A DNA stretch of 64,000 bases from Mobula hypostoma (GCF_963921235.1 NC_086098.1:142786001-142850000); one strand, 5' to 3'. Numbered from the stretch's first letter, positions 5,295-48,110 are shown. Made by a program: numbers and translations. The notes: generated by a model not told the origin, from the sequence alone.

Positions 5295-6102
5295 AAGATG
5301 GTGACTGCTTGTGAGTTGCAGTTCCATAAGCATCAGCATCTCACCAGAGTGCTCATTTTTTCGTGAGTGAGTCCAGACAGTAAACATTGAACAACTGTTA
5401 TGTCTGTGATAAGCTATTAACCATAGAAGCACTCAATTCTAATATGCATTTTTCCAGTTGAAGCATTAGTAATTAACTGATATTAAAGCAAATTGCACAC
5501 TGTCCACAATTTAATGCAAATTTTCAGAATGTGATACTATGTCAGTTCAGCATTTAATGTTCATACTTTTGAAATGTGCTAGTTCAGAGGTGTTTAAAAC
5601 ATGGATCCAAATTGCTTTCAGATGTTGCCTTCTAACTGAATGTCATAAAGTCATGGAGCACTGCCACACAGAAAGAGTCCCTTTGGCCCACCTAGTTGTG
5701 CCAAACTGTTAGTCCTGACCAGTCGTACATGACCTACACCTGGACCATAGTTCTTCATAACCAACCCATCCATGGATAGGAAATGGATAAGTACATGGAT
5801 GGGAGTGAATATGGTATGTTATGTGACTCTGATAGCTTAGCTGTTGAAGTTACAGACAGGTAGAAAATAAAACAGTTCAGTGTTGAAGGTAACTTTGAGA
5901 TTAAATCAACTAGCACTTGATAGGTAGAACAGCCCAGTACAAGATCAGGCACTTCAACCCACAATGTCTATACTAACCATATTGCCAATTTAAACTAATC
6001 CGATCTGCCTGCAAATGGACCATATCCCTGCCTATTCAAGCAACACACATAAAAGTTACTGGTGAACGCAGCAGGCCAAGGCAGCATCTCTAGGAAGAGG
6101 TA

Positions 6103-6139
6103 CAGTCGACGTTTCAAGCCAAGACCCTTCGTCAGGACT
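6103..6139 (-). ncRNA. Type I hammerhead ribozyme motif (weak stem II)
   Basis: Minus strand reads agtc-CTGACGA-A-gggtcttggctt-GAAA-C-GTC-gact. Confidence 0.7.
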
Positions 6140-6448
6140 AACTGAAGGAAGAGCTAGTAAGAGATTTGAAAGGGGGAGGGGGAGATCCAAAATGATAGGA
6201 GAAGACAGGAGGGGAAGGGATGGAGCCAAGAGCTGGACAGGTGATTGGCAAAAGGGATATGAGAGGATCATGGGACAGGATGCTTAGGGAGAAAGAAAAG
6301 GGGGAGGGGGGAATCCCAGAGGATGGGCAAGGGGTATAGTGAGAGGGACAGAGGGAGAAAAAGAATATATATAAATATAAAATAATGGATGGGGTACGAG
6401 GGGGAGGAGGGGTATTAACGAAAGTTAGAGAAGTCAATGTTCATGCCA

Positions 6449-6605
6449 CACACATCAAAGTTGCTGGTGAACGCAGCAGGCCAGGCAGCATCTCTAGGAA
6501 GAGGTACAGTCGACGTTTCAGGTCGAGACCCTTCATCAGGACTAACTGAAGGAAGAGTTAGTAAGAGATGTTGCTTGAATTTCCAGCATCTGCAGAATTC
6601 CTGTT
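6449..6605 (-). mobile_element. 157-bp Penelope pseudo-LTR mini-insertion inside the same family
   Basis: 16-bp TSD gtcaatgttcatgcca at 6433-6448 and 6606-6621. Repeats about 6044-6165 and ends in a short inverted tail (tgttgcttgaatttccagcatctgcag). Confidence 0.85.
6507..6543 (-). ncRNA. Type I hammerhead ribozyme motif (best-preserved copy)
   Basis: Minus strand reads agtc-CTGATGA-A-GGGT(ctcg)ACCT-GAAA-C-GTC-gact: intact core, paired stems I and II, palindromic ACGT minimal stem III. Confidence 0.8.
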
Positions 6606-6949
6606 GTCAATGTTCATGCCATCAGGTTGGAGGCTACCCAGGTGGAATATAAGGTGTTGTTCCTCCAACTTGAGTGTGGCTTCATCTTGACAGTAGAGGA
6701 GGCCGGGGATAGATATATCAGAATGGGAATGGGACGTGGAATTAAAATGTGTGGCCACTGGGAGATCCTGCTTTCTCCTGCCTATTCATGCACCTGATTA
6801 AAGATTAACCTCTCAAAGATTGCTATTTTATCTGCTTCCACCACTTCCCATGGCTGCATGATTGTTAACCTATCTCTTCTGTGTAAAAAGAACAACTAAA
6901 AAGACCTCCGAACCTAGAATAGTCCAGCACAAAAATAGGTGCTCTGTCC

Positions 6950-9110
6950 CAAGATTTCAAATTAAACAGGTTCTCTTCTGCCAGTACATGATGCATATCC
7001 CTCCAACCCTGCATATTCATGAACTCACCTAGCAGCCTCTTAAATGTCATTATCATATCTGCTTCTACCACTCCACCCATTCCAGACACCTGCCTCATTC
7101 CACATGTAAAAACAACTTGACCCACACATCCCCTTTAATCTACTCCCCTCTCACCTTAAATGCATGTTGTCTAGTACTTGACGTTTCTATCCTGGAATAA
7201 AGATTCTGACTGGCTATGCCATCTATGCCTCTCATAATTTTAGAAACTTGTATCAGCTCCTTCAGCCTCAGTTATTCCAGAAAAAATAGCCATACTCTCA
7301 AAGTTCAGAACTCATACCCTCACATCTAGGCAACATCCTGATAAACCTCTTCTGCATTCTTTATAAAGCCTCCTGGGGTGACTAGAATTATACATAATTC
7401 TCCAAATGTGGCCTAACCAAATACACTTTCTTTACCACCCTAGCTACTTATGTAGAACAACTGGGACCCTTTGGCCCACGAAGTTGTAGCAGCCTGTATA
7501 GCGTACTCTATACTCAATCTAACCCTTCAATATCCTCGGGCAATTGCTATTACCACCCTGGGAAAAAGGTGCTGGCTGTCCACTATCAATGCCTCTCATA
7601 ATTTTGTGCACCTCCATCAAGTCACCTCTCATACTCTGTCACTCCAAAGAGAAAAGCTTTGTATTCACCTTTAAGTTTAATCTTCTTGACACTTGACACT
7701 TTTCTGGATCGAACTCCATCTATCATTTCTTTATCCAACTCTATATTCTGATTATATCCCTTAGTACCTACAACAACCTTCTCCACTATCCACAACACCT
7801 CCAACCTCATGTCATCTGCAAACTTATTGACCCACCCTTCCTTTCCTCAGCCAAGTCATTTAGAAAATTCACAAGGGGCAGGAGTCCTACCCTACCATCT
7901 TTACCCTATCATACATTTTAGTGAGCTGTGGACAAAGACCCCAATATCCTAATCCATAATGTCATTAAGGGCCCTGCTATTAACTGTGTACTTTACATCA
8001 GCCCTCCCAAAGAGTCACACCTCGCATTTCTTCGATTAACATATCTGCCATTTATTTGCCTGTATCTATATCTTGCTGTATCATTTGACACTGCACTGTT
8101 TACAACTTCAGCAATCTTTGTGTTATCTGCATACTCAAATCTCTTACTAATATCCATAAATGACATTTACTGCTCTATCTTCGTCAATGAACTTCATCAC
8201 CTCCACAAAAAACTCAAATCAAGTTTGTAGGACATGACATGTTCTGCTGACTGCCCCTAATCGGGTAACGTTTTTCCAGAATCCACCTAAATCCTATCCC
8301 CAAGAATCCTCTCCAGCAGCTTTCCTACCATTGATGAGAGAGCTACTTGCCTGTAATTCCTGGATGATCCCTATTTCCTTTCTTGAACAAAGGGAACAAC
8401 ATTGACTAATCTTCAGTCCTTTGGGGCCCTACCTACTTCTAGTAAGGATACAAGAATCTTTATCAAAGCCCCAGTGGTCTCCTCTCTTGCCCCTTTCAAT
8501 AACCTGAGATATATCCCATCAAGCCTTGGTGACTTATCTACCTTAATGTTCTTCAAAAGGCTCATCACCATCTCTAATTCCATAGAACATTAGTATGCCC
8601 TTCTCCTTAGTGAATACCAATGCAAAGTACTCATTTAGTGCCCACCATATCTCATTTAAAATTTTCCTTCTCTCTTTAAAGCTGTCCTTCACTATTTGAC
8701 ATTTCCACCATGGCCAAAATATTCTATCCACTGTATCTATGCCTCTGATAATTTTTTTTACTAACATCAGGTCACCCCACAGCCTCTGACACTTCCAGCT
8801 AAACAACCCAAGTTTGTCCACCATCTCTTTATAAACTAATACTCTCTTAATCTAGACAACATCTTGCTGAATTTCTGTAATCTCTCCAAACCTTCCACAC
8901 CCTCCTTTTAATGCTGCGACCAAAATGGCAAACAAACGTCAAACATTCCCCAAATAAAACGCAACTTCCTGACTTTTATACTCAGCACCCCAATCAGTGA
9001 AGGAAAGAATGCACATGTGTACCATCTCTTTTGTTGGCACTTAAAAGGAGCTATGGACTTGTATTCCAACATCCCTCTATATATCAATTCTTTTAAGGTC
9101 TTAGTGTACA
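6950..9110 (-). mobile_element. Cluster of old CR1 LINE fragments
   Basis: Decayed CR1 motifs, e.g. ORF 8543-8824 (LGLFSW...LWGDLMLVKKIIRGID; ALNEYFALVFTKE) and ORF 6865-7125 (VVEADMIMTFKRLL). Confidence 0.7.
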
Positions 9111-11490: not shown

Positions 11491-11574
11491 GCAAGATAGA
11501 GTGAAATCTCTAGCAACACGCATAAAAGTTGCTGGTGAACACAGCAGGCCAGGCAGCATCTCTAGGAAGAGGTA

Positions 11575-11612
11575 CAGTTGATGTTTCGGGCCGAGACCCT
11601 TCATCAGGACTA
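11575..11612 (-). ncRNA. Hammerhead motif with mutated stem III
   Basis: CTGATGAAGGGTCTCGGCCCGAAACATCaact; ACGT has changed to ACAT. Confidence 0.6.
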
Positions 11613-12134
11613 ACTGAAAGAAGAGCTAGTAAGAGATTTGAAAGGGGGAGAGGGAGGGGGAGATCCGAAATGATAGGACAAGACAGGAGGGGGACGGATG
11701 GAGCCAAGAGCTGGACAGGTGATCGGCAAAAGGGATATGAGAGGATCATGGGACAGGAGGCCTAGGGAGAAAGAAAAGGGGGAGGGGGGAAGCCCAGAGG
11801 ATGGGCAAGGGGTATAGTGAGGGGGACAGAGGGAGAAAAAGGAGAGAGAGAAAAAAAATGTGTGTACAGTATATAAATAAATAACGGACGGGGTACGAGG
11901 GGGAGGTGGGGCATTAGCAGACATTTGAGAAGTCAATGTTCGTGCCATCAGGTTGGAGGCTACCCAGAGGGAATATAAGGTGTTGTTCCTCCAGCCTGAG
12001 TGTGGCCTCATCTTGACAGTAGAGGAGGCCGTGGATACCTTTCTTTCTCCCTAGGCCTCCTGTTTTCTCCTATCATTTCAGATCTACCCCTCTCCTTCCC
12101 ACTTTAACACTTCTTACTAGTTCTTCTTTCAGTT

Positions 12135-12171
12135 AGTCCTGACGAAGGGTCTCGGCCCAAAACATCGACTG
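12135..12171 (+). ncRNA. Hammerhead motif with mutated core
   Basis: agtcCTGACGAAGGGTCTCGGCCCAAAACATCgact; GAAA has changed to AAAA. Confidence 0.6.
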
Positions 12172-12899
12172 TACCTCTTCCTATAGATTCTGCCTGGCCT
12201 GCTGCGTTCACCAGCATTTTTTGTGTGTGTTGCTTGAAATTCCAACATCTGCAGATTTCCTTGTGTTTGCAAGAGTGAAATCTCTGTCTTGGTTAGAGAT
12301 TGTACATGCATTTAGACACTTGCATAGACTGAAGGTGTACTCTTATAGAAAGACGTGAAGACCAAAGCTACAAAGACTGAAATCAGCATATTCTTTCGCG
12401 TACATATAACTGAATTTTTTTTCTCACCTTCCGCCCAGTTGTAAATGCTGTCACCTTCAAGAGGCCTAATCCAATCTTGAAGTGGAAGAATTACTCATCA
12501 TTTTTACCACCTCCCTCCTTTTCAGTTCTGAAGCTCTCGCACACTCGCACCACCAACCAAGGGCCCATTGTATTTCAACTTTCCAGCATCTGCAGTTTTC
12601 TCGCCCAATGGATTACTGCGGCTGGATTCTGTCTGCTGCAAAAAAGATGAAGATCAAAGAAATACTAAAGAGCTGGTGAGAGATAAGTCAACTTCACGCA
12701 TTCTTGTTTGATGATCTCAGCTGCATTCTTCTGCAATTACCAGGGAACCGTACCTTTCGCAGCACATTTGAATAATAAAAGTCCAGAGCTGTTTCAGAAT
12801 TTACTCAGCAGCCTTAACCTTGGCTGTTGGCCCTGACAGACCTGTGATGCTTCCTGCAAATGTCATTGACTTCAGAGAAGAAATTCTAACATCCTAAGG

Positions 12900-13390
12900 T
12901 GCAACCCCTTAGCCTCCAAGCTGATGGCATGAATAATGATATACTATATCCGTCCGGGCATAAAAAATCCCTCTCCCTCTCCTCTTTTTCTATTCCCCCC
13001 GTGGCTTCTTACCATAGTCATAGTCATACTTTATTGATCCGGGGGGAATCAATTGCCTCTCCTCACCTGCCTGTCACCTCCCGCTGATTCCCTTCTTCCC
13101 TTCTTTTCTCCTATGGTCCACTCTCCTCTCCTATCAGATTCCTTCCTCTCCAGCCCTTTACCTTTCCCACCCACCTGGTTTCACCTATCACCTCCAGCTA
13201 TCCTCCTTCCCCTCTCCTCACCTTTTTATTCTGACATCATCCTCCTTCCTTTCCAGCCCTGAAGAAGGGACTCGGCCCGAAACGTCTACTATTCATTTCC
13301 ATAGACGCTGCCTGACCTGCGGAGGTCTTCCACCATTTTGTGTGGGTTGCTCTGGACTTGCAGCATCTGCAGAATCTCTTGTGTTTATGT
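12900..13390 (+). mobile_element. Penelope-like 3' end and pseudo-LTR (second subfamily)
   Basis: SLQADGMN remnant, C/T-rich UTR, hammerhead motif and the gctgcctgacctgc...cagcatctgcaga tail. Confidence 0.8.
13255..13290 (+). ncRNA. Hammerhead motif with intact core and poor stem I
   Basis: CTGAAGA-A-GGGactcggCCC-GAAACGTC at 13259-13286. Confidence 0.65.
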
Positions 13391-14549
13391 GGAGTGTCAG
13401 ACTTTACTCCTTATAATGATTTCAGTTACTCTCCAAGCGATTTGAAAGAAACAAACCTACTGAGGTTCGTTTGTCTCAGCCTCTCCACTTCACGTTTAAG
13501 TTGCTTCCTTTTTCATTCCTTTTCATCTCAAAACTATTTGTTGACTTTTGAAACTTACCCCTTGATGAGAGATCATCATTGAACAGAATAGAGGTGGATA
13601 AATTATTCCCGGCCCCTATGCTGAAAGCATGCAACCAGCGTGCAAATCAACCACAATGTGTATCCAGTGCTGTCTTTCTCCTCTCCTGGTGAGCATACAC
13701 CAACCACTAATTTGTTCATTAACTGTGACGATTTGTCACCAGAGCAAGGTGCAGTCAATTCTTTAGTAGGAGTCAAAGAGTTATAGCTGCTCAGAGAGTG
13801 GACATTCGGTCCATCAAGTCCCTGCCATCTTCTCGTGCAACCAGTCAGTCCTATGTCCCACTTTTCTGTGCTGGATAGAGGCTTTTTCACTTTTTGTCAG
13901 TCAGGACTGGAAGCAAGCCTGCTGTGGGTGGAGGTTTACAAAGTGTTCCTTCCAGCATCCATCGACAACATTTCCATCCTGAAGAGCTTACCCTTGCCTT
14001 AGGCTCTCAGTGAGGTAGGACCTTAGGTATTTGGGCCAGGGGTGGCTTTTACACCACTGAAAACCCATACACGTCATGACACTCTGCTGTTCTATGCCAT
14101 CATTCTTCAGGCCCCAAGGTCTCTGCAGGACCTTTGCCTTAAGGTGACTGTAAAGCTGTTTCGTTTCACTAATGGGGGGTAAATCTTGCAATCTAGGTGC
14201 TCCTTGCATTTGCAGTTAATTAATTTATCAATCTTGACATTCTCATCAAACCTGTTTTGGTTCTTTGTGTTAAAGAGTCTCTCCACGAGGCAGACATCAG
14301 GGCAACCCCCTTAAGGTGTGGATGCTTGGCAGTTCCTATAGGCTGGGAGTTGACACCCTCTGTGGCAGTATCTGGGAAGATCCAGCTTCGGAGTCTTAGT
14401 TTGACACTCATCTTCCTCCAGCAATGCTTCTGTTGATATTGATGTATTTTGGCCAGGTTGATAAAGGTGATTGTCAGAGACTCTCCTACCTGAGAAAAAG
14501 ACTGTGGCAATCCACCTTATTCAAGCACTTACTGTATTTTTTAACTTCC

Positions 14550-35367: not shown

Positions 35368-35748
35368 ATCAGAATGGGAACGGGAAGTGGAATTAAAATG
35401 GGTGCCCACTGGGAGATCCCGCTTGTTCTGGCAGACAGAGTACAGCTGGTCGGCAAAGCGGTCTCTCAATCTGTGTCAGGTTTCCTGAGATACGGGGGGC
35501 CACACCGGGAGCACCGGAGACAGTAGGTGACCCCAACAGACTCACAGGTGCAGTGTGGCCTCACCTGGAAGGTCTGTCTGGGTCCATGAATGGTAGTGAG
35601 CGCAGAGGTAGCACTTGTTCTGCTTGCAAGGATAAGTGCCAGGAGGGAGGTCAGTGGGGAGGAATGAATGGATGAGGGAGTCGCGTAGGGAGTGATCCCT
35701 GCAGAAAGCCGAAATTCGGTGGGGGGTGTGAGGAAAAGTTGTGTTTGG
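35368..35748 (-). mobile_element. Penelope GIY-YIG fragment
   Basis: PGTYPCKQNKC..C and FQVR.H.TCES.GV.YCLRCSRCG motifs. Confidence 0.85.
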
Positions 35749-35749
35749 T

Positions 35750-36478
35750 AATAGGTGCATGAGTAGGCCATTCAGCCCTTCGAGCCAGCACCACTATTCA
35801 CTGTGATCATGGCTGATCATCCACAATCAGTACCCTTTTCCTGCCTTCTCCCCATATCCCTTCACTCTGCTTTCTTTAAGAGCTCTATCTAACTCTTTTT
35901 TGAAAGACTCAGATAATTGGCCTCCACTGCCTTCTGAGGCAGAGCATTCCACAGAACCACAACCCTCTGTGTGAAAAAGTTTTTCCTCAACTCTGTTCTA
36001 AATTGTCTACTCCTTATTCTTAAACTGTGGCCTCTAGTTCTGGACTCCCCCAACATTGGGAACATGTTTCCTGCCTCTAGTGTGTGCAATCCCTTAATAA
36101 TCTTATATATTTCAATCAGATCCCCTCTTATCCTTCTAAATTTCAGCGTATACAGCCCCAGTCGCTCCAATCTTTCAACATATGACAGTCCCGCCATCCC
36201 GGGAATTAACCTCGTGAACCTACGCTGCACTCCCTCAATAGCTAGAATGTCCTTCCTCAAATTTGGAGACCAAAACTGTACACAATACTCCAGGTGTGGT
36301 CTCACCAGGGCCTTGTACAACTGCAGAAGGACCTCTTTGCTCCTATACTCAACTCCCCTTGTTATGAAGGCCAGCATGCCATTAGCTTTCTTCACTGCCT
36401 GCTGTACCTGCATGCTTACTTTCAGTGACTGATGAACAAGGACACCTAGATCTCGTTGTACTTCCCCTTTTCCTAACT
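35750..36478 (-). mobile_element. CR1 3' fragment (174-aa open ORF2 C-terminus)
   Basis: ORF 35889-36413 (LYKALVRPHLEYCVQFWSP...FFTQRVV.LWNALP). Confidence 0.95.
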
Positions 36479-37794: not shown

Positions 37795-39130
37795 GTGAGG
37801 TGAAAGGTCAGCGTAAACAGCTGGGGGAGGGGAGGAAGAACTACAGGGTGGTAGGTGATAGGTGAAACTGGGAGAGGGGGAGGAGTGAAGTAAAGAGCTG
37901 GGAAACTGATTGGTGAAAGAGATAAAGGGCTGGAGAAGGGGGAATCTGATAGGAGAGGGAAGAAGAACATGGAAGAAAGGGGAGGGGGAGGAGCACCAGA
38001 GGGAGGTGATGGGCAGGGAAGAATATGAGATACGAGAGGGAAACAGGAATAATGAAGGAGAGGGAAATTACTGGAAGTTTGAGAAATTGATGGTCATATC
38101 ATCAGGTTGGAGGCTGCCCAGGTGGAATATGAGATGTTACTTCTCCAACCTGTGTGTGGCAGAAGTGGAGGCCTTGGATTGGCATGTCGGAATGGGAATG
38201 GGAAATAGAAATGAAGTGGTTGGCCACTGGGAAATCCTGCTTTTTCTGGTAGATGACGTATACGTGCTTGGTGAAGCAGTCTCCCAATCTATGTTAGGTC
38301 TCACCGATATACAGGAGGCCGCACCAGAGAGAGTATATGACTGCAACAGGCTCACAGGTGAAGTGTCGCCTCACCTGGAAGGACTGTTTAGGGCCCTGAA
38401 TGGTAGTATTGGGGGAGGTGTAAGGACAGGTGTGGCACTTGTTCTGCTTGCAAGGGTAAGTGCCAGGAGGGAGAATTAGTGGGGTGAGGCGAATGGTCAA
38501 GGGAGTTGTGTAGGGAGTGATCCCTGCTGAAAGCAGAAAGTGGGGAGGGGGGTAGGGAAAGATGTACATGGTGGTGGGGCTCCATTGGAGATGGCGGAAG
38601 TTAACGGAGAATTATGTGCTGGACACAGAGGCTCCTAGGGTGGTAGGTGAGGACAAGAGGAGCTCTATCCCTGGTGGGGTGGTGGGAGGATGGGATGCAG
38701 GCAGACGTGTGCGAAATGGAAGAGATGCGGGTGAGGGCAGTGTTGATGGTGGAGGATGGAAAGCCCCTTTCTTTGAAGAAGGAGGACATCTCATTAGTTC
38801 TGGAATGAAAAGCCTCATCCTGAAAGCAGATGCAGCAAAGATGGGGGAACTGAGAGGAGGGGGTGGCATTTTTATAAATGACAGTGTGAGAAGAGGTATA
38901 GTCCAGATAGCTGTGAGAATCAGTGGGTTTGTAAAAGATATCAGTAGATACACTGTCCCCAGAGATAGAGACAAAGAATCGAGGAAGGGGAGGGAGGTGT
39001 CAGAAATGGATGGATGATCAGGTAAATTTGAGGGTAGGGTGGAAGTTGGAGGCAAAGTTGATGAAGTCGATGAGCTCAACATGGAAGCAGGAAGCAGTCA
39101 TCGATGTAGCGTAGGAAAAGTTGGGGAGTG
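37795..39130 (-). mobile_element. Penelope-like element (RT C-terminus plus GIY-YIG)
   Basis: FLRYIDD, FFKERGFP, PLVLTYHP, C..C, LLYIGET and VANHF motifs across ORFs 38102-39270. Confidence 0.92.
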
Positions 39131-46257: not shown

Positions 46258-48110
46258 GAGCAGCTGACACTTTGGGCCAAAGCCTTTTATCAGGACTGGA
46301 AAAATAGAGGGCAGAAGCCCAAATAAAGGGGTCGAGGGAGGGGAAGGAGCACAAGCTGGCAGGTGATAGGTGAGCCCAGTTGAGAGGGGGGAGATAGGTA
46401 GTTGGGGGAAGGGTGGGGAGTGTTCAATGGGAATGTTGTGAGAAACTGGGAGGTGATAGGTGGAAGAAGATAGAATCTGATAGGAGAGGACAGTGTGCAG
46501 GGGAATAAAAGGAAAGAGGTGGTTGACCTGGAGAGAGGAAGGTGTGGGTGATGGGAAGGACATGAGGGTGGGGGAGGGGGAAGAGAAGTGGTAAAGAGCT
46601 GGAGGAATGAGGAAAAATGAAGTTGGGGGGGTGGTAGGGGAAGAGGGGAGTAGTTACCAAAAGTTAGAGCAACTGATGTTGAGTCTGTCCATTTGGAATA
46701 TGAGATGTTGCTGCCCCCGGTCTGTGACCGCCCTCAGCATGGCTGCAGAGGAGGCTGTGGACAGACTTGTCAGTGTGGAAATGGGAAGTAGAATTAAAAT
46801 GGTCGTCCATCAGGAGATCCTGACTGAGTGGCAGCGAAGTGAAGTTGCTCGACCAAGTGATACCCCAATCGGCATTCAGTGGCACTGGCGTAGAGCAGCC
46901 TGCACTGGGCATATATAAGTGACATATATCGATTTGCACGTGAAGTTCTGCCACATCAGTTTAGGGCCCTGAATGGCAATGAGGGAGGAGATGCAGGGGC
47001 AGGCATACGTGCCTATAGGAAGGTCGGTGGGGAGGGATGAGCAGACAAGGGAGTCGTGGAGAGAGAAATCCCTGTGGAAAGCAGAGAGTGAAGGGGAGGG
47101 GAAGATGTACCTGGTGGTGGGATCCTATTGGTGAAAGTTGTGGAGAATAAAATGTGGGATGTGGGGTGGTAGGTGAGGACAAGGGGAACCCTATCCCTGT
47201 TATGTTGGATGGGTAATGGGGTGAGGGCAGACATGCAGGAAACTGAAGAGGTGTGGGTTGGGGATGCATTAATAACATTGGAGGGGAAACCCCATATTCT
47301 CAGATGTCCTGGAATGGTAAACTTCATTACATGAACAGATGTGGGAGAGACAGAGGAAATGAGTAAAGGGAATGGCATCCCTGTGAGAGACAAAGTGGGA
47401 AAAGATGTAGTCGGTAACTGTGGGAGTCAGTAGGCTTTTAAAATATGTTGGTAGATAATCCATCTCTGGTGATGGAGACAGAAAGATCAAGAAAAGGGAC
47501 AGAGGTGTCAGAAATGGACCAGGTGATGTTGGGGGTGGGGCGGAAGTTGGTGGCGAAATTCATAAAATTGATGGGCTCCACAAGGTACAAGAAGCATCAT
47601 CAGTGTAGCAGAGAAAGAGTTGTGGAGTGTTACCAGTGTCAGCTTGGTCCATGTAGCCAACGTAAAGCCAGGCATAGCTGGGGACCATGCGAGTGCCCAT
47701 TGCTTCCCTCTTGGGCGAAGCCTAAAGAGAAGTTTTTAAGGGTGAGTACCAATTCTGTCAGATGGAGGAGGGTGATGGTGGTGGAGGAGAACTGTTCGGG
47801 TCTGTTATGAAGAAAGGAGTTGAGAGACCTGAGGCCTTCCTGTTGGGGGATGGAAATGTACAGGGACTGGACATCCATTGTGAAAATGAGGCAGTCAGGG
47901 CTCTGGACTGGGTACTGGTGGAAACCATGCGAAATATCACGAGTGTAGGTTGGGAAGGGACTGAACCAAGAGCACGTGAGTTCACTGGGGCAGGAGCAGG
48001 TGGAAACCGCAGGCCTAGTGGGGCAGTTAACTTTGTGGATCTTGGGTAGAGAAGGACAGTATGAGGTTGGAGAACAATGACAAAAAGCGGAGATTCTCCA
48101 GACTGATGAG
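46258..48110 (-). mobile_element. Decayed Penelope-like element (RT through pLTR)
   Basis: MDVQSLYISIP..EGL..L.ELVLTLKNFS, RVPLVLTYHP and DHFNSTSH motifs; degenerate hammerhead near 46261-46298. Confidence 0.85.

What the first reader, a model, noticed from the sequence alone, without database searches (positions are those of the whole stretch)
6103..6543. Self-nested Penelope insertion places two hammerhead ribozymes in tandem 404 nt apart (retrozyme-like unit)
Seen: a 157-bp pLTR copy with a 16-bp TSD (6433-6448 and 6606-6621) sits inside a copy of its own family. This puts two same-strand hammerheads (6103-6139 and 6507-6543) exactly 404 nt apart. Both keep the full CUGANGA/GAAA core, the GUC triplet and a self-complementary ACGU stem III. 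Established: minimal type I hammerheads of Penelope-like elements have this stub stem III and are thought to cleave as dimers, and tandem-hammerhead retrozymes yield monomeric and circular RNAs. Inference: a minus-strand transcript could fold an intramolecular dimer and release a roughly 404-nt RNA able to circularise, a retrozyme-like unit created by accident.
Basis: partly seen in the sequence, partly recalled or inferred. Interest (0 to 1): 0.8.

Follow-up and report, generated by a model that had tools for sequence, protein, structure and literature searches.

The report
Nested Penelope fragments with two hammerheads
Two small hammerhead ribozyme motifs lie 404 bases apart because a 157-base scrap of a Penelope-like jumping gene landed inside an older copy of the same family; this is an ordinary by-product of how these very abundant elements insert, and nothing found here shows it makes a circular RNA.

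Summary
Two minus-strand minimal type I hammerhead motifs (6103-6140 and 6507-6544) lie exactly 404 nt apart. A 157-bp insert (6449-6605) with a perfect 16-bp target-site duplication sits inside an older 5'-truncated Penelope-like element (PLE, 6039-6777).

The insert is not a plain pLTR copy. It has the usual two-armed PLE form: a 121-nt hammerhead-bearing arm without the "tail", joined head-to-head to a 36-nt inverted arm that is essentially the family's 3' tail.

No test supported the retrozyme-like reading:
- There is no tandem repeat; only about 131 of the 404 nt are duplicated.
- The 404-nt unit is 72% pyrimidine and no more structured than shuffles (z -0.67).
- Both motifs have G10.1-U11.1 instead of the family's G-C, and the host copy's stem II is predicted unstable.
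- The cis-dimer fold is about 29 kcal/mol worse than the minimum-free-energy fold.
- Three RNA runs show zero depth on the unique flanks.

The family covers about 9% of this window, so such pairs are expected often. This scan holds three other notes of tandem hammerhead pairs elsewhere in this genome, with no follow-up shown. Published work already proposes that tandem PLE hammerheads dimerise and reports weak or protein-dependent cleavage.

Verdict: an ordinary dead nested insertion, of low interest.

The parts
6039..6777 (-). Host element: a 5'-truncated Penelope-like element copy. It holds the ORF C-terminus, a CT-rich 3' UTR, a hammerhead and a 3' end without tail, and is interrupted by the nested insert.
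   Evidence: 87% identical over 527 nt to an uninterrupted copy at 11512-12037. Sequence read.
6027..6042 (.). Host element target-site duplication, downstream copy (CCTGCCTATTCAAGCA). Its partner is at 6777-6792, matching 15 of 16.
   Evidence: D4.
6777..6792 (.). Host element target-site duplication, upstream copy (CCTGCCTATTCATGCA).
   Evidence: D4.
6606..6776 (-). Remnant of the PLE ORF, 57 codons ending ...LQPDGMNID. This is the C-terminal half of the GIY-YIG endonuclease domain. The last 16 nt are also the upstream target-site duplication copy of the nested insert.
   Evidence: Translation. 179 relatives at E<=0.001. Three of the longer relatives scanned (P0112, P0111, P0006) have a sub-threshold GIY-YIG match ending just before, or overlapping the start of, the matched stretch, and P0112 also has a sub-threshold RVT_1 match upstream.
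6415..6432 (-). The last 5 codons and stop of the same ORF (FSNFR*), now separated from the rest by the insert.
6433..6448 (.). Target-site duplication of the nested insert, downstream copy (16 of 16 identical to 6606-6621).
   Evidence: D6.
6449..6569 (-). Nested insert, arm 1: a 121-nt 5'-truncated 3' end of the family. It carries the hammerhead and ends at ...TGTGTG without the tail.
   Evidence: 93% identical to the host copy and to 11517-11637. Alignment.
6570..6605 (+). Nested insert, arm 2: 36 nt in the opposite orientation, equal to the family's 3' tail (GTTGCTTGAATTTCC...).
   Evidence: Matches the tails at 12228-12261 and 13346-13375. Inverted repeat I2 with the host 3' end. Same architecture as 11512-12271.
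6507..6544 (-). Hammerhead motif of the insert. Stem I is 6544-6540 with 6511-6507, the core CUGAUGA is 6539-6533, the extra A is 6532, stem II is 6531-6520, GAAA is 6519-6516, and CGUC is 6515-6512. Predicted cleavage is at 6512/6511.
6103..6140 (-). Hammerhead motif of the host copy. The core CUGACGA is 6135-6129 and stem II is 6127-6116, with three G-U pairs out of four. Predicted cleavage is at 6108/6107.
6108..6511 (-). The hypothetical 404-nt RNA between the two predicted cleavage sites.
   Evidence: C147 U144 A63 G50. MFE -55.7 kcal/mol, z -0.67, 41% paired.

Best explanation
This is a dead, nested pair of Penelope-like element (PLE) fragments in a devil-ray genome. An older 5'-truncated copy (6039-6777, minus strand) keeps the last 62 codons of the RT/GIY-YIG ORF, a CT-rich 3' UTR, a minimal hammerhead and a tail-less 3' end. 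A second integration of the same family later hit it 16 nt upstream of the stop codon. That event left the usual two-armed PLE product between 16-bp target-site duplications: a 121-nt hammerhead-bearing arm and a 36-nt inverted tail arm. This shape is expected if both target strands are cut and both prime reverse transcription at two internal start sites. The two same-strand hammerheads 404 nt apart are a by-product of that event. Most likely they do nothing. The locus is not detectably transcribed, the motifs are partly decayed, and the unit has none of the properties of a retrozyme. The anatomy is shown; the integration mechanism is inferred from published PLE biochemistry.
For: Motifs, spacing and target-site duplication. 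Two-armed architecture. A second example of the same architecture lies at 11512-12271, with a perfect 14-bp target-site duplication, a 528-nt tail-less arm and a 232-nt tailed arm. Published PLE features match. These are strong 5' truncation, an adjacent inverted 5'-truncated copy and a 30-40-bp tail at one end (PMC8557442). The PAc enzyme cuts and extends both strands and starts reverse transcription at two internal sites that define the tail (PMC11167929). PLE identity of the ORF remnant. The family is abundant: PLE-family hits cover 8.8% of the window and there are 6 family hammerhead sites in 64 kb. RNA and DNA runs alike show enormous multi-copy depth. Evidence against activity: no tandem repeat; z -0.67 and 72% pyrimidine. 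The best fold containing the hammerhead cis-dimer is -57.0 kcal/mol against an MFE of -85.8, with pair probabilities <=1e-4. Host stem II is +0.8 kcal/mol, and both copies have G10.1-U11.1 against G-C in four other copies. RNA depth is 0 on the unique flanks 5841-5981 and 6781-7015, apart from about 2 in one bin of one run, in three RNA runs, where the DNA run gives 9-35.
Against: The catalytic core, the GUC site and the palindromic ACGU are intact in both copies, so activity cannot be excluded from sequence alone. Nearest-neighbour folding ignores tertiary contacts and protein help, and the same competing folds exist in every copy of the family. The RNA evidence comes from assembled contigs of three small runs, which show presence and not absence. 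Newt and axolotl hammerheads do work as dimers across repeats of about 330-350 nt, so the 404-nt distance itself is no obstacle (PMC7229834).
Confidence: 0.85

Rival explanations
1. Accidental proto-retrozyme. A minus-strand read-through transcript folds the two hammerheads into a cis dimer and cuts at both sites. It releases a 404-nt RNA that a tRNA ligase circularises and that PLE reverse transcriptase might copy.
For: Both cores, the GUC sites and the ACGU palindromes are intact. Dimeric action of stem-III-less hammerheads and circRNAs of 170-400 nt are documented for other elements (PMC4209133; PMC7229834). Retrozymes are proposed to derive from PLE pLTRs, with a mean consensus of 363 bp in the one cartilaginous fish sampled (bioRxiv 10.64898/2026.07.22.740005).
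Against: There is no RNA on the unique flanks and no tandem repeat. The unit is not self-paired. The cis-dimer fold is about 29 kcal/mol above the MFE. Stem II is weakened in both copies and unstable in the host copy. Minimal PLE hammerheads cleave poorly even as dimers or trimers. The PAc hammerhead needs the PLE protein, and no RNA-seq ends were seen at its site. Only 1 of 9 Xenopus dimer elements cleaved in vitro.
Confidence: 0.06
2. The nesting is targeted self-insertion, not a random hit. The PLE endonuclease or priming step prefers DNA that resembles the start of the element's own tail (TGCWTGAA). The family's own ORF end (GGCATGAAC, the codons for DGMN) offers such a site. The same tandem-hammerhead arrangement should then recur at this position in many copies. 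This is compatible with the best explanation as to function.
For: At all three tail-less junctions in the window, the adjoining target resembles the tail start in register. For the insert the match is 9 of 16, with 7 of the first 9; window-derived null P is 0.012 and 0.003. For the host it is 9 of the first 11, read directly from the sequences printed. For 11512 it is 8 of 14. The published D. virilis endonuclease needed the tail sequence for recognition, and PLEs are said to insert into or next to existing copies (PMC6765202). Another first-stage note reports a same-strand pair 394 nt apart elsewhere in this genome.
Against: There are only three junctions. The four other places in the window that match this stretch of the ORF end (46681-46822 only at about 70% identity) are not interrupted there. 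In the DNA run the flanks of other copies' ends are heterogeneous and AT-rich, with consensus agreement 0.43-0.49, so self-insertion is not the dominant mode. PAc was reported to start reverse transcription at a site not homologous to the cut DNA.
Confidence: 0.3
3. The duplication is a local rearrangement rather than a retrotransposition event. Candidates are replication slippage, unequal exchange between two copies, or an assembly artefact.
For: PLE tandem and inverted structures are known to trouble assemblies (PMC8557442). Contigs of the DNA run break inside the repeat.
Against: The insert has a perfect 16-bp target-site duplication and an inverted tail arm, and it differs from the host copy at 8 of 122 positions. 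None of these would come from a local duplication. DNA contigs of the same species match both unique flanks without any difference (records 17 and 24).
Confidence: 0.03

Closest known systems
Penelope-like element insertions with minimal hammerheads in their pLTR/3' region (Cervera and de la Pena 2014, PMC4209133; Craig et al. 2021, PMC8557442)
   Same: [quoted passage not shown] Strong 5' truncation, an inverted 5'-truncated arm, a 30-40-bp tail at one end only, long target-site duplications and an RT/GIY-YIG ORF. Insertion into or next to older copies.
   Different: Here the second hammerhead comes from a very short (157-bp) nested fragment inside the ORF end, not from a partial tandem of full copies about 3 kb apart. 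Both motifs have a G-U pair at 10.1-11.1.
Metazoan non-LTR retrozymes (Cervera and de la Pena 2020, PMC7229834; Li et al. 2026 preprint)
   Same: Two same-strand type I hammerheads bound a unit of about 400 nt, and the sequence derives from a PLE terminus.
   Different: This is not a head-to-tail repeat of one unit and not shown to be a multi-copy family of that unit. It is not self-paired, has no detected RNA, and its hammerheads are minimal and weakened.
Newt/axolotl satellite hammerheads acting as dimers across tandem repeats (Forster et al. 1988, cited; PMC7229834)
   Same: An unstable stem III with a palindromic loop, so that two neighbouring motifs must pair to form an active site.
   Different: Those are long arrays of canonical type I motifs with loop-loop contacts and abundant transcripts. 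This is a single pair of minimal motifs at a silent locus.
Poseidon PAc of Anolis carolinensis, in vitro integration (Frangieh et al. 2024, PMC11167929)
   Same: Two internal reverse-transcription start sites account for tail and no-tail ends. Cutting and extension of both target strands accounts for two-armed insertions.
   Different: In PAc the start site was reported as not homologous to the cut DNA. Here three of three tail-less junctions abut tail-like target sequence. In PAc the hammerhead straddles the pLTR-ORF junction. Here it lies about 275 nt after the stop codon.

Membership tests
Penelope-like element (EN+ PLE) insertion | Single ORF with a reverse transcriptase followed by a C-terminal GIY-YIG endonuclease | tested here: met
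   The 57-aa remnant has 179 relatives at E<=0.001. P0112 has RVT_1 at 38-181 and GIY-YIG at 402-435, with the remnant aligned to 440-492. P0111 and P0006 also have GIY-YIG ending just before, or overlapping the start of, the matched stretch. The Pfam scores are below the curated cut-offs, so the support is moderate.
Penelope-like element (EN+ PLE) insertion | 5' truncation, an adjacent inverted 5'-truncated arm, and a 30-40-bp tail at one end only | tested here: met
   The insert is a 121-nt tail-less arm plus a 36-nt inverted tail arm. The same layout occurs at 11512-12271. Definition taken from PMC8557442.
Penelope-like element (EN+ PLE) insertion | Target-site duplication flanking the whole insertion unit | tested here: met
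   16 of 16 for the insert and 15 of 16 for the host. 14 of 14 for the 11512-12271 unit.
Minimal type I hammerhead of PLEs | Conserved core CUGANGA ... GAAA and a UH cleavage triplet in type I order | tested here: met
   (0 matches expected by chance); alignment.
Minimal type I hammerhead of PLEs | [quoted passage not shown] | tested here: met
   An extra A follows CUGANGA, and ACGU precedes C17, in both copies. Features as listed in PMC4209133.
Minimal type I hammerhead of PLEs | Conserved G10.1-C11.1 pair closing stem II | tested here: not met
   Both copies have G-U. The four other family copies in the window have G-C (pair 22-33).
Minimal type I hammerhead of PLEs | Self-cleavage (as a dimer) | not testable with these tools
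   Folding only. The hammerhead dimer scores -9.6 against -30.9 kcal/mol for the alternative duplex. In cis it scores -57.0 against -85.8.
Rfam Hammerhead_1 (canonical type I) | Score at or above the gathering threshold of the covariance model | tested here: not met
   No hammerhead hit at gathering or at E<=10. This is expected for variants without a stem III.
Non-LTR retrozyme | Head-to-tail tandem repeat of a 150-450-bp unit with at least two consecutive units each carrying a hammerhead | tested here: not met
   Tandem Repeats Finder finds no array here. Only 87+44 nt are duplicated within the 404-nt spacing.
Non-LTR retrozyme | Transcribed, giving linear and circular RNAs of unit length | tested here: inconclusive
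   RNA depth is 0 on the unique flanks in three RNA runs. The repeat part cannot be assigned to this locus, and only contigs were available, not reads.
Non-LTR retrozyme | Highly self-paired unit RNA | tested here: not met
   z -0.67 against shuffles, 41% paired, 72% pyrimidine.
Non-LTR retrozyme | The unit itself is a multi-copy mobile family | not testable with these tools
   The rest of this genome could not be searched. The search of earlier notes by sequence came back blank, which means nothing.

The most novel reading that the evidence does not exclude
The locus could be a snapshot of how non-LTR retrozymes arise from Penelope-like elements. A tail-like sequence in the element's own ORF end attracts a second, very short insertion. 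That creates a retrozyme-sized (404-nt) unit bounded by two dimer-dependent hammerheads. If transcribed, the unit could be excised, circularised and copied by the PLE enzyme.
Probability: 0.05. Interest if true: 0.6.

Novelty: new member of a known kind. Interest (0 to 1): 0.15.

Why it matters
As it stands it matters little. It is one more nested fragment of a very abundant ray PLE family, and the idea that neighbouring PLE hammerheads pair to cleave is already published.

Two small points may be useful. First, this locus and 11512-12271 give clean, target-site-duplication-bounded examples of the two-armed, tail-at-one-end PLE integration product predicted by recent in vitro work. Second, all three tail-less junctions in the window abut target DNA that resembles the start of the tail. 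That hints at target choice or priming by similarity, which differs from the in vitro report for the anole element. A genome-wide census could settle this point. It would also show whether self-nesting at the ORF end is a regular source of tandem hammerhead pairs.

Tried and rejected
- Rfam at gathering and at E<=10 gave no hammerhead hit, only chance-level PrrB/RsmZ and SNORD125 matches.
- Pfam on the short ORF remnants gave nothing, and the first attempt failed on stop codons.
- A PDB sequence search with the endonuclease piece gave nothing.
- ESM Atlas gave only weak GIY-YIG and HTH_animal leads.
- Covariation across the six family hammerheads in the window was uninformative: no compensatory changes, because the copies are too few and too close.
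- A fuzzy-regex count of motifs missed copies and was replaced by a Hamming scan.
- The register used for the host junction was off by one. The 9-of-11 figure is read directly from the sequences printed there.
- Earlier notes searched by place and by sequence were blank for this locus.
- The Lunse et al. paper on PLE hammerhead dimers is not held and is cited only through reviews.
- The read laying joints between the two copies ("skips" of 171-177 and of 406) are other family copies without the insert, seen in the DNA run and a few in RNA runs. They are not RNA processing.
- RNA depth over the repeat is about 1.5-4.6% of the DNA-run depth in the bins I compared. It could be dispersed intronic copies or DNA carry-over, so even family-level expression is not shown.
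- No host gene was recognised near the locus. ORFs in the window are LINE and PLE remnants.

Full report
**What is there**

Reading 5700-7000 on both strands and a pattern search confirm two minus-strand hammerhead motifs. One is CUGAUGA...GAAACGUC at 6539-6512 and the other is CUGACGA...GAAACGUC at 6135-6108. A third, on the plus strand, is at 13259-13286. None is expected in 100 dinucleotide shuffles.

The repeat finder gives two co-linear direct repeats, 87 nt at 94% and 44 nt at 91%, with spacing 404 and 405. It also gives a perfect 16-bp direct repeat at 6433-6448 and 6606-6621 that brackets 157 bp.

**Anatomy of the host copy**

On the minus strand, 6777 to 6039 is a 5'-truncated element. 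It is 87% identical over 527 nt to an uninterrupted copy at 12037-11512. It begins in an ORF whose last 62 codons read ...HFNSTSHSHSDISIPGLLYCQDEATLKLEEQHLIFHLGSLQPDGMNID / FSNFR-stop.

A full HMMER pass over 1.84 billion representative proteins finds 179 relatives at E<=0.001. Several of the longer relatives scanned are chimeric gene models: GPCR, RecQ5, NYAP and DUF4518 proteins that carry this piece (at the end, or in one case inside), which is typical of a transposon fragment.

Three of the longer relatives scanned have a GIY-YIG match ending just before, or overlapping the start of, the aligned stretch. P0112 also has an RVT_1 match further upstream. These Pfam scores are below the curated cut-offs, but the RT then GIY-YIG order is the PLE architecture.

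After the stop come about 275 nt of CT-rich 3' UTR, the hammerhead, and a 3' end at ...TGTGTGTTGCTTGAA. The copy is flanked by a 15-of-16 target-site duplication, CCTGCCTATTCA(A/T)GCA (D4).

**Anatomy of the insert**

The 157 bp are not one piece. On the minus strand, 6569-6449 (121 nt) is the family's 3' region with the hammerhead, ending at ...TGTGTG. The remaining 36 nt, 6570-6605, read on the plus strand and equal the family's 3' tail. The tail (GTTGCTTGAATTTCC...) also closes the copies at 12228-12271 and 13340-13385. So the insert is a head-to-head pair of arms, one tail-less and one consisting of the 36 nt of tail-end sequence that arm 1 lacks.

The window holds a larger example of the same layout. 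At 11512-12271, a 528-nt tail-less minus arm meets a 232-nt tailed plus arm, all inside a perfect 14-bp target-site duplication, AGAGTGAAATCTCT.

This is the published PLE insertion signature. Its elements are strong 5' truncation, an adjacent inverted 5'-truncated copy, and a 30-40-bp tail at one end only (PMC8557442). It also fits in vitro work on the anole element PAc, which cuts and extends both target strands and starts reverse transcription at two internal sites that bracket the tail (PMC11167929). Earlier notes also name the organism as a devil ray.

**The hammerheads**

Both motifs have the features listed for minimal PLE hammerheads in PMC4209133:
- a 5-bp stem I;
- an unpaired A between positions 9 and 10.1;
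- a 4-bp stem II with a tetraloop;
- no stem III;
- a palindromic ACGU across 15.1-16.1.

One feature that paper stresses is missing. The G10.1-C11.1 pair is G-U in both copies here, but G-C in the four other family copies in the window. The change is C to U at a CpG.

Stem II of the insert copy is worth -1.7 kcal/mol. Stem II of the host copy, with three G-U pairs out of four, is +0.8 kcal/mol and so is predicted not to form alone. Rfam's hammerhead models do not score either motif, as expected for variants without a stem III. Six copies are too few and too similar to show covariation.

**Would a minus-strand transcript fold the proposed cis dimer?**

I wrote out the domain-swapped dimer, with stem I and the ACGU/ACGU helix formed between the two motifs and stem II formed within each, and scored it.
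- As two 58-nt fragments it scores -9.6 kcal/mol, against -30.9 for the predicted duplex. That duplex pairs the quasi-palindrome CCUUCAG...CUGAUGAAGG between copies and hides the cleavage site in a UCGAC/GUCGA hairpin.
- In the 501-nt transcript 6580-6080, the best structure containing the cis dimer is -57.0 kcal/mol against an MFE of -85.8. The pair probabilities of the stem I and stem III helices are 1e-4 or less, and those of stem II at most about 0.01.

This model ignores tertiary contacts and proteins, and the competing folds are common to the whole family. It therefore argues against easy spontaneous cleavage, not against all activity.

This agrees with the literature. Minimal PLE hammerheads cleave poorly in vitro even as dimers or trimers (review PMC6765202). 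The PAc hammerhead cleaved only with the PLE protein present, and no RNA-seq ends were seen at its site. Only one of nine Xenopus dimer elements cleaved.

**Is it retrozyme-like?**

Metazoan non-LTR retrozymes are head-to-tail repeats of one 150-450-bp unit. They are expressed as abundant, highly self-paired linear and circular RNAs (PMC7229834). An operational definition requires a TRF-detected array with at least two consecutive hammerhead-bearing units.
- TRF finds no array here. Only about 131 of the 404 nt are duplicated.
- The 404-nt unit is 72% pyrimidine and 41% paired. It folds no better than shuffles (z -0.67).

So it shares only the bare geometry of two same-strand hammerheads about 400 nt apart.

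**Expression**

Three RNA runs and one DNA run were laid on 5700-7100. These were Logan contigs, and no raw reads were available.
- The DNA run matches both unique flanks without any difference, so it is probably the same species.
- On the unique flanks (5841-5981 and 6781-7015) the RNA runs have depth 0, apart from about 2 in one bin of one run, where the DNA run has 9-35.
- Over the repeat (6029-6780) RNA and DNA runs alike show huge multi-copy depth. RNA is roughly 1.5-4.6% of the DNA-run depth in the bins I compared.
- That depth cannot be assigned to this locus and may even be DNA carry-over.
- The listed joints that skip 171-177 or 406 nt are simply other copies without the insert.
- No RNA back-junction was among those shown.

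This is absence of evidence from small assembled runs, not proof of silence.

**Chance and recurrence**

PLE-family hits cover 8.8% of the window, and there are six family hammerhead sites in 64 kb. With random independent placement, 0.11 same-strand pairs within 404 nt are expected per window of this kind. One such pair is therefore unremarkable. If the window is typical, a Gb-scale genome should hold very many; that extrapolation is my inference. The scan's notebook lists three other first-stage notes of tandem hammerhead pairs in this genome, with no follow-up shown, at spacings of 394 nt, 315-340 nt, and a TSD-flanked dimer.

**A possible non-random element**

At each of the three tail-less junctions in the window, the adjoining target resembles the element's own next bases, the start of the tail.
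- For the insert, the target TGGCATGAAC... matches the element's TTGCTTGAAT... at 7 of the first 9 positions and 9 of 16. The window-derived null P values are 0.003 and 0.012.
- For the host, 9 of the first 11 positions match, read directly from the sequences printed.
- For 11512, 8 of 14 positions match.

The nested insert's target is the family's own codons for DGMN. The D. virilis endonuclease was reported to need the tail sequence for recognition. Reviews also say that PLEs tend to insert into or beside older copies.

Self-nesting at this spot may therefore be favoured. However, the four other places in the window that match this stretch are intact there. The flanks of other copies' ends in the DNA run are heterogeneous and AT-rich. 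I give this reading about 0.3.

**Verdict**

The structural reading is confirmed and refined. The functional inference is unsupported on every test available and was already anticipated, in general form, in the literature. This is an ordinary dead nested PLE insertion, with interest 0.15.

Noticed in passing
window 11498-12285: A clean two-armed PLE insertion. The minus arm 12039-11512 has no tail. The plus arm 12040-12271 ends in the tail. A perfect 14-bp target-site duplication, AGAGTGAAATCTCT, lies at 11498-11511 and 12272-12285. The hammerheads on opposite strands (11580-11607 and 12139-12166) are both decayed at CpGs (GUC to AUC; GAAA to AAAA).
   Followed up: partly
window 6433-6448, 6777-6794, 11498-11511: All three tail-less element ends abut target DNA that resembles the start of the element's tail (about TGCWTGAA). 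This suggests target choice or priming by similarity. The host's downstream target-site duplication copy carries the element's T where the upstream copy has A.
   Followed up: partly
window 12880-13395: A related but distinct PLE subfamily copy on the plus strand with an intact hammerhead core (13259-13286), G-C at 10.1-11.1 and a full tail. The position after the cleavage site is U instead of G, which breaks the first stem I pair.
   Followed up: no
window 6530-6552 and 6126-6148 (minus strand): A quasi-palindrome, CCUUCAG...CUGAUGAAGG, is conserved in the family. It is predicted to hide the catalytic core in a hairpin or an intermolecular duplex. A UCGAC/GUCGA hairpin hides the cleavage site. 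Together these may act as a built-in off-state.
   Followed up: partly
proteins P0007, P0034, P0027, P0012: Public gene models for a GPCR, a RecQ5-like, a NYAP and a DUF4518 protein carry this PLE endonuclease fragment (at their C-terminus in three, internally in the NYAP model). They are likely annotation chimeras caused by the repeat.
   Followed up: no
window 6777-7075: The flank of the host copy is itself repeated about 229 bp downstream. Examples are 6777-6792 against 7008-7023, and 6809-6845 against 7036-7072 at 76%.
   Followed up: no
window 5708-5719: A 12-nt plus-strand match to the stem I/core start of the hammerhead (GTTAGTCCTGAC). It lies in a low-copy repeat (DNA depth 63-121 against a baseline of 9) that also has faint RNA depth. 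It may be a deleted PLE remnant or chance.
   Followed up: no
Read laying joint 6598 to 6462, RNA run X5 (table 5c): A contig from another locus joins the tail end back to the tail-less 3' end through 17 unrelated letters, at depth about 500. It may be two adjacent insertions or a re-copied two-armed unit.
   Followed up: no
window 35466-35771, 38294-38569, 46664-46954: Further decayed PLE ORF pieces. They include a cysteine-rich linker followed by a GIY...YIG-like endonuclease start (...VIYSLWCGLLYIGET) and HFNSTSH motifs. CR1/L2-like LINE reverse-transcriptase remnants lie between them.
   Followed up: no
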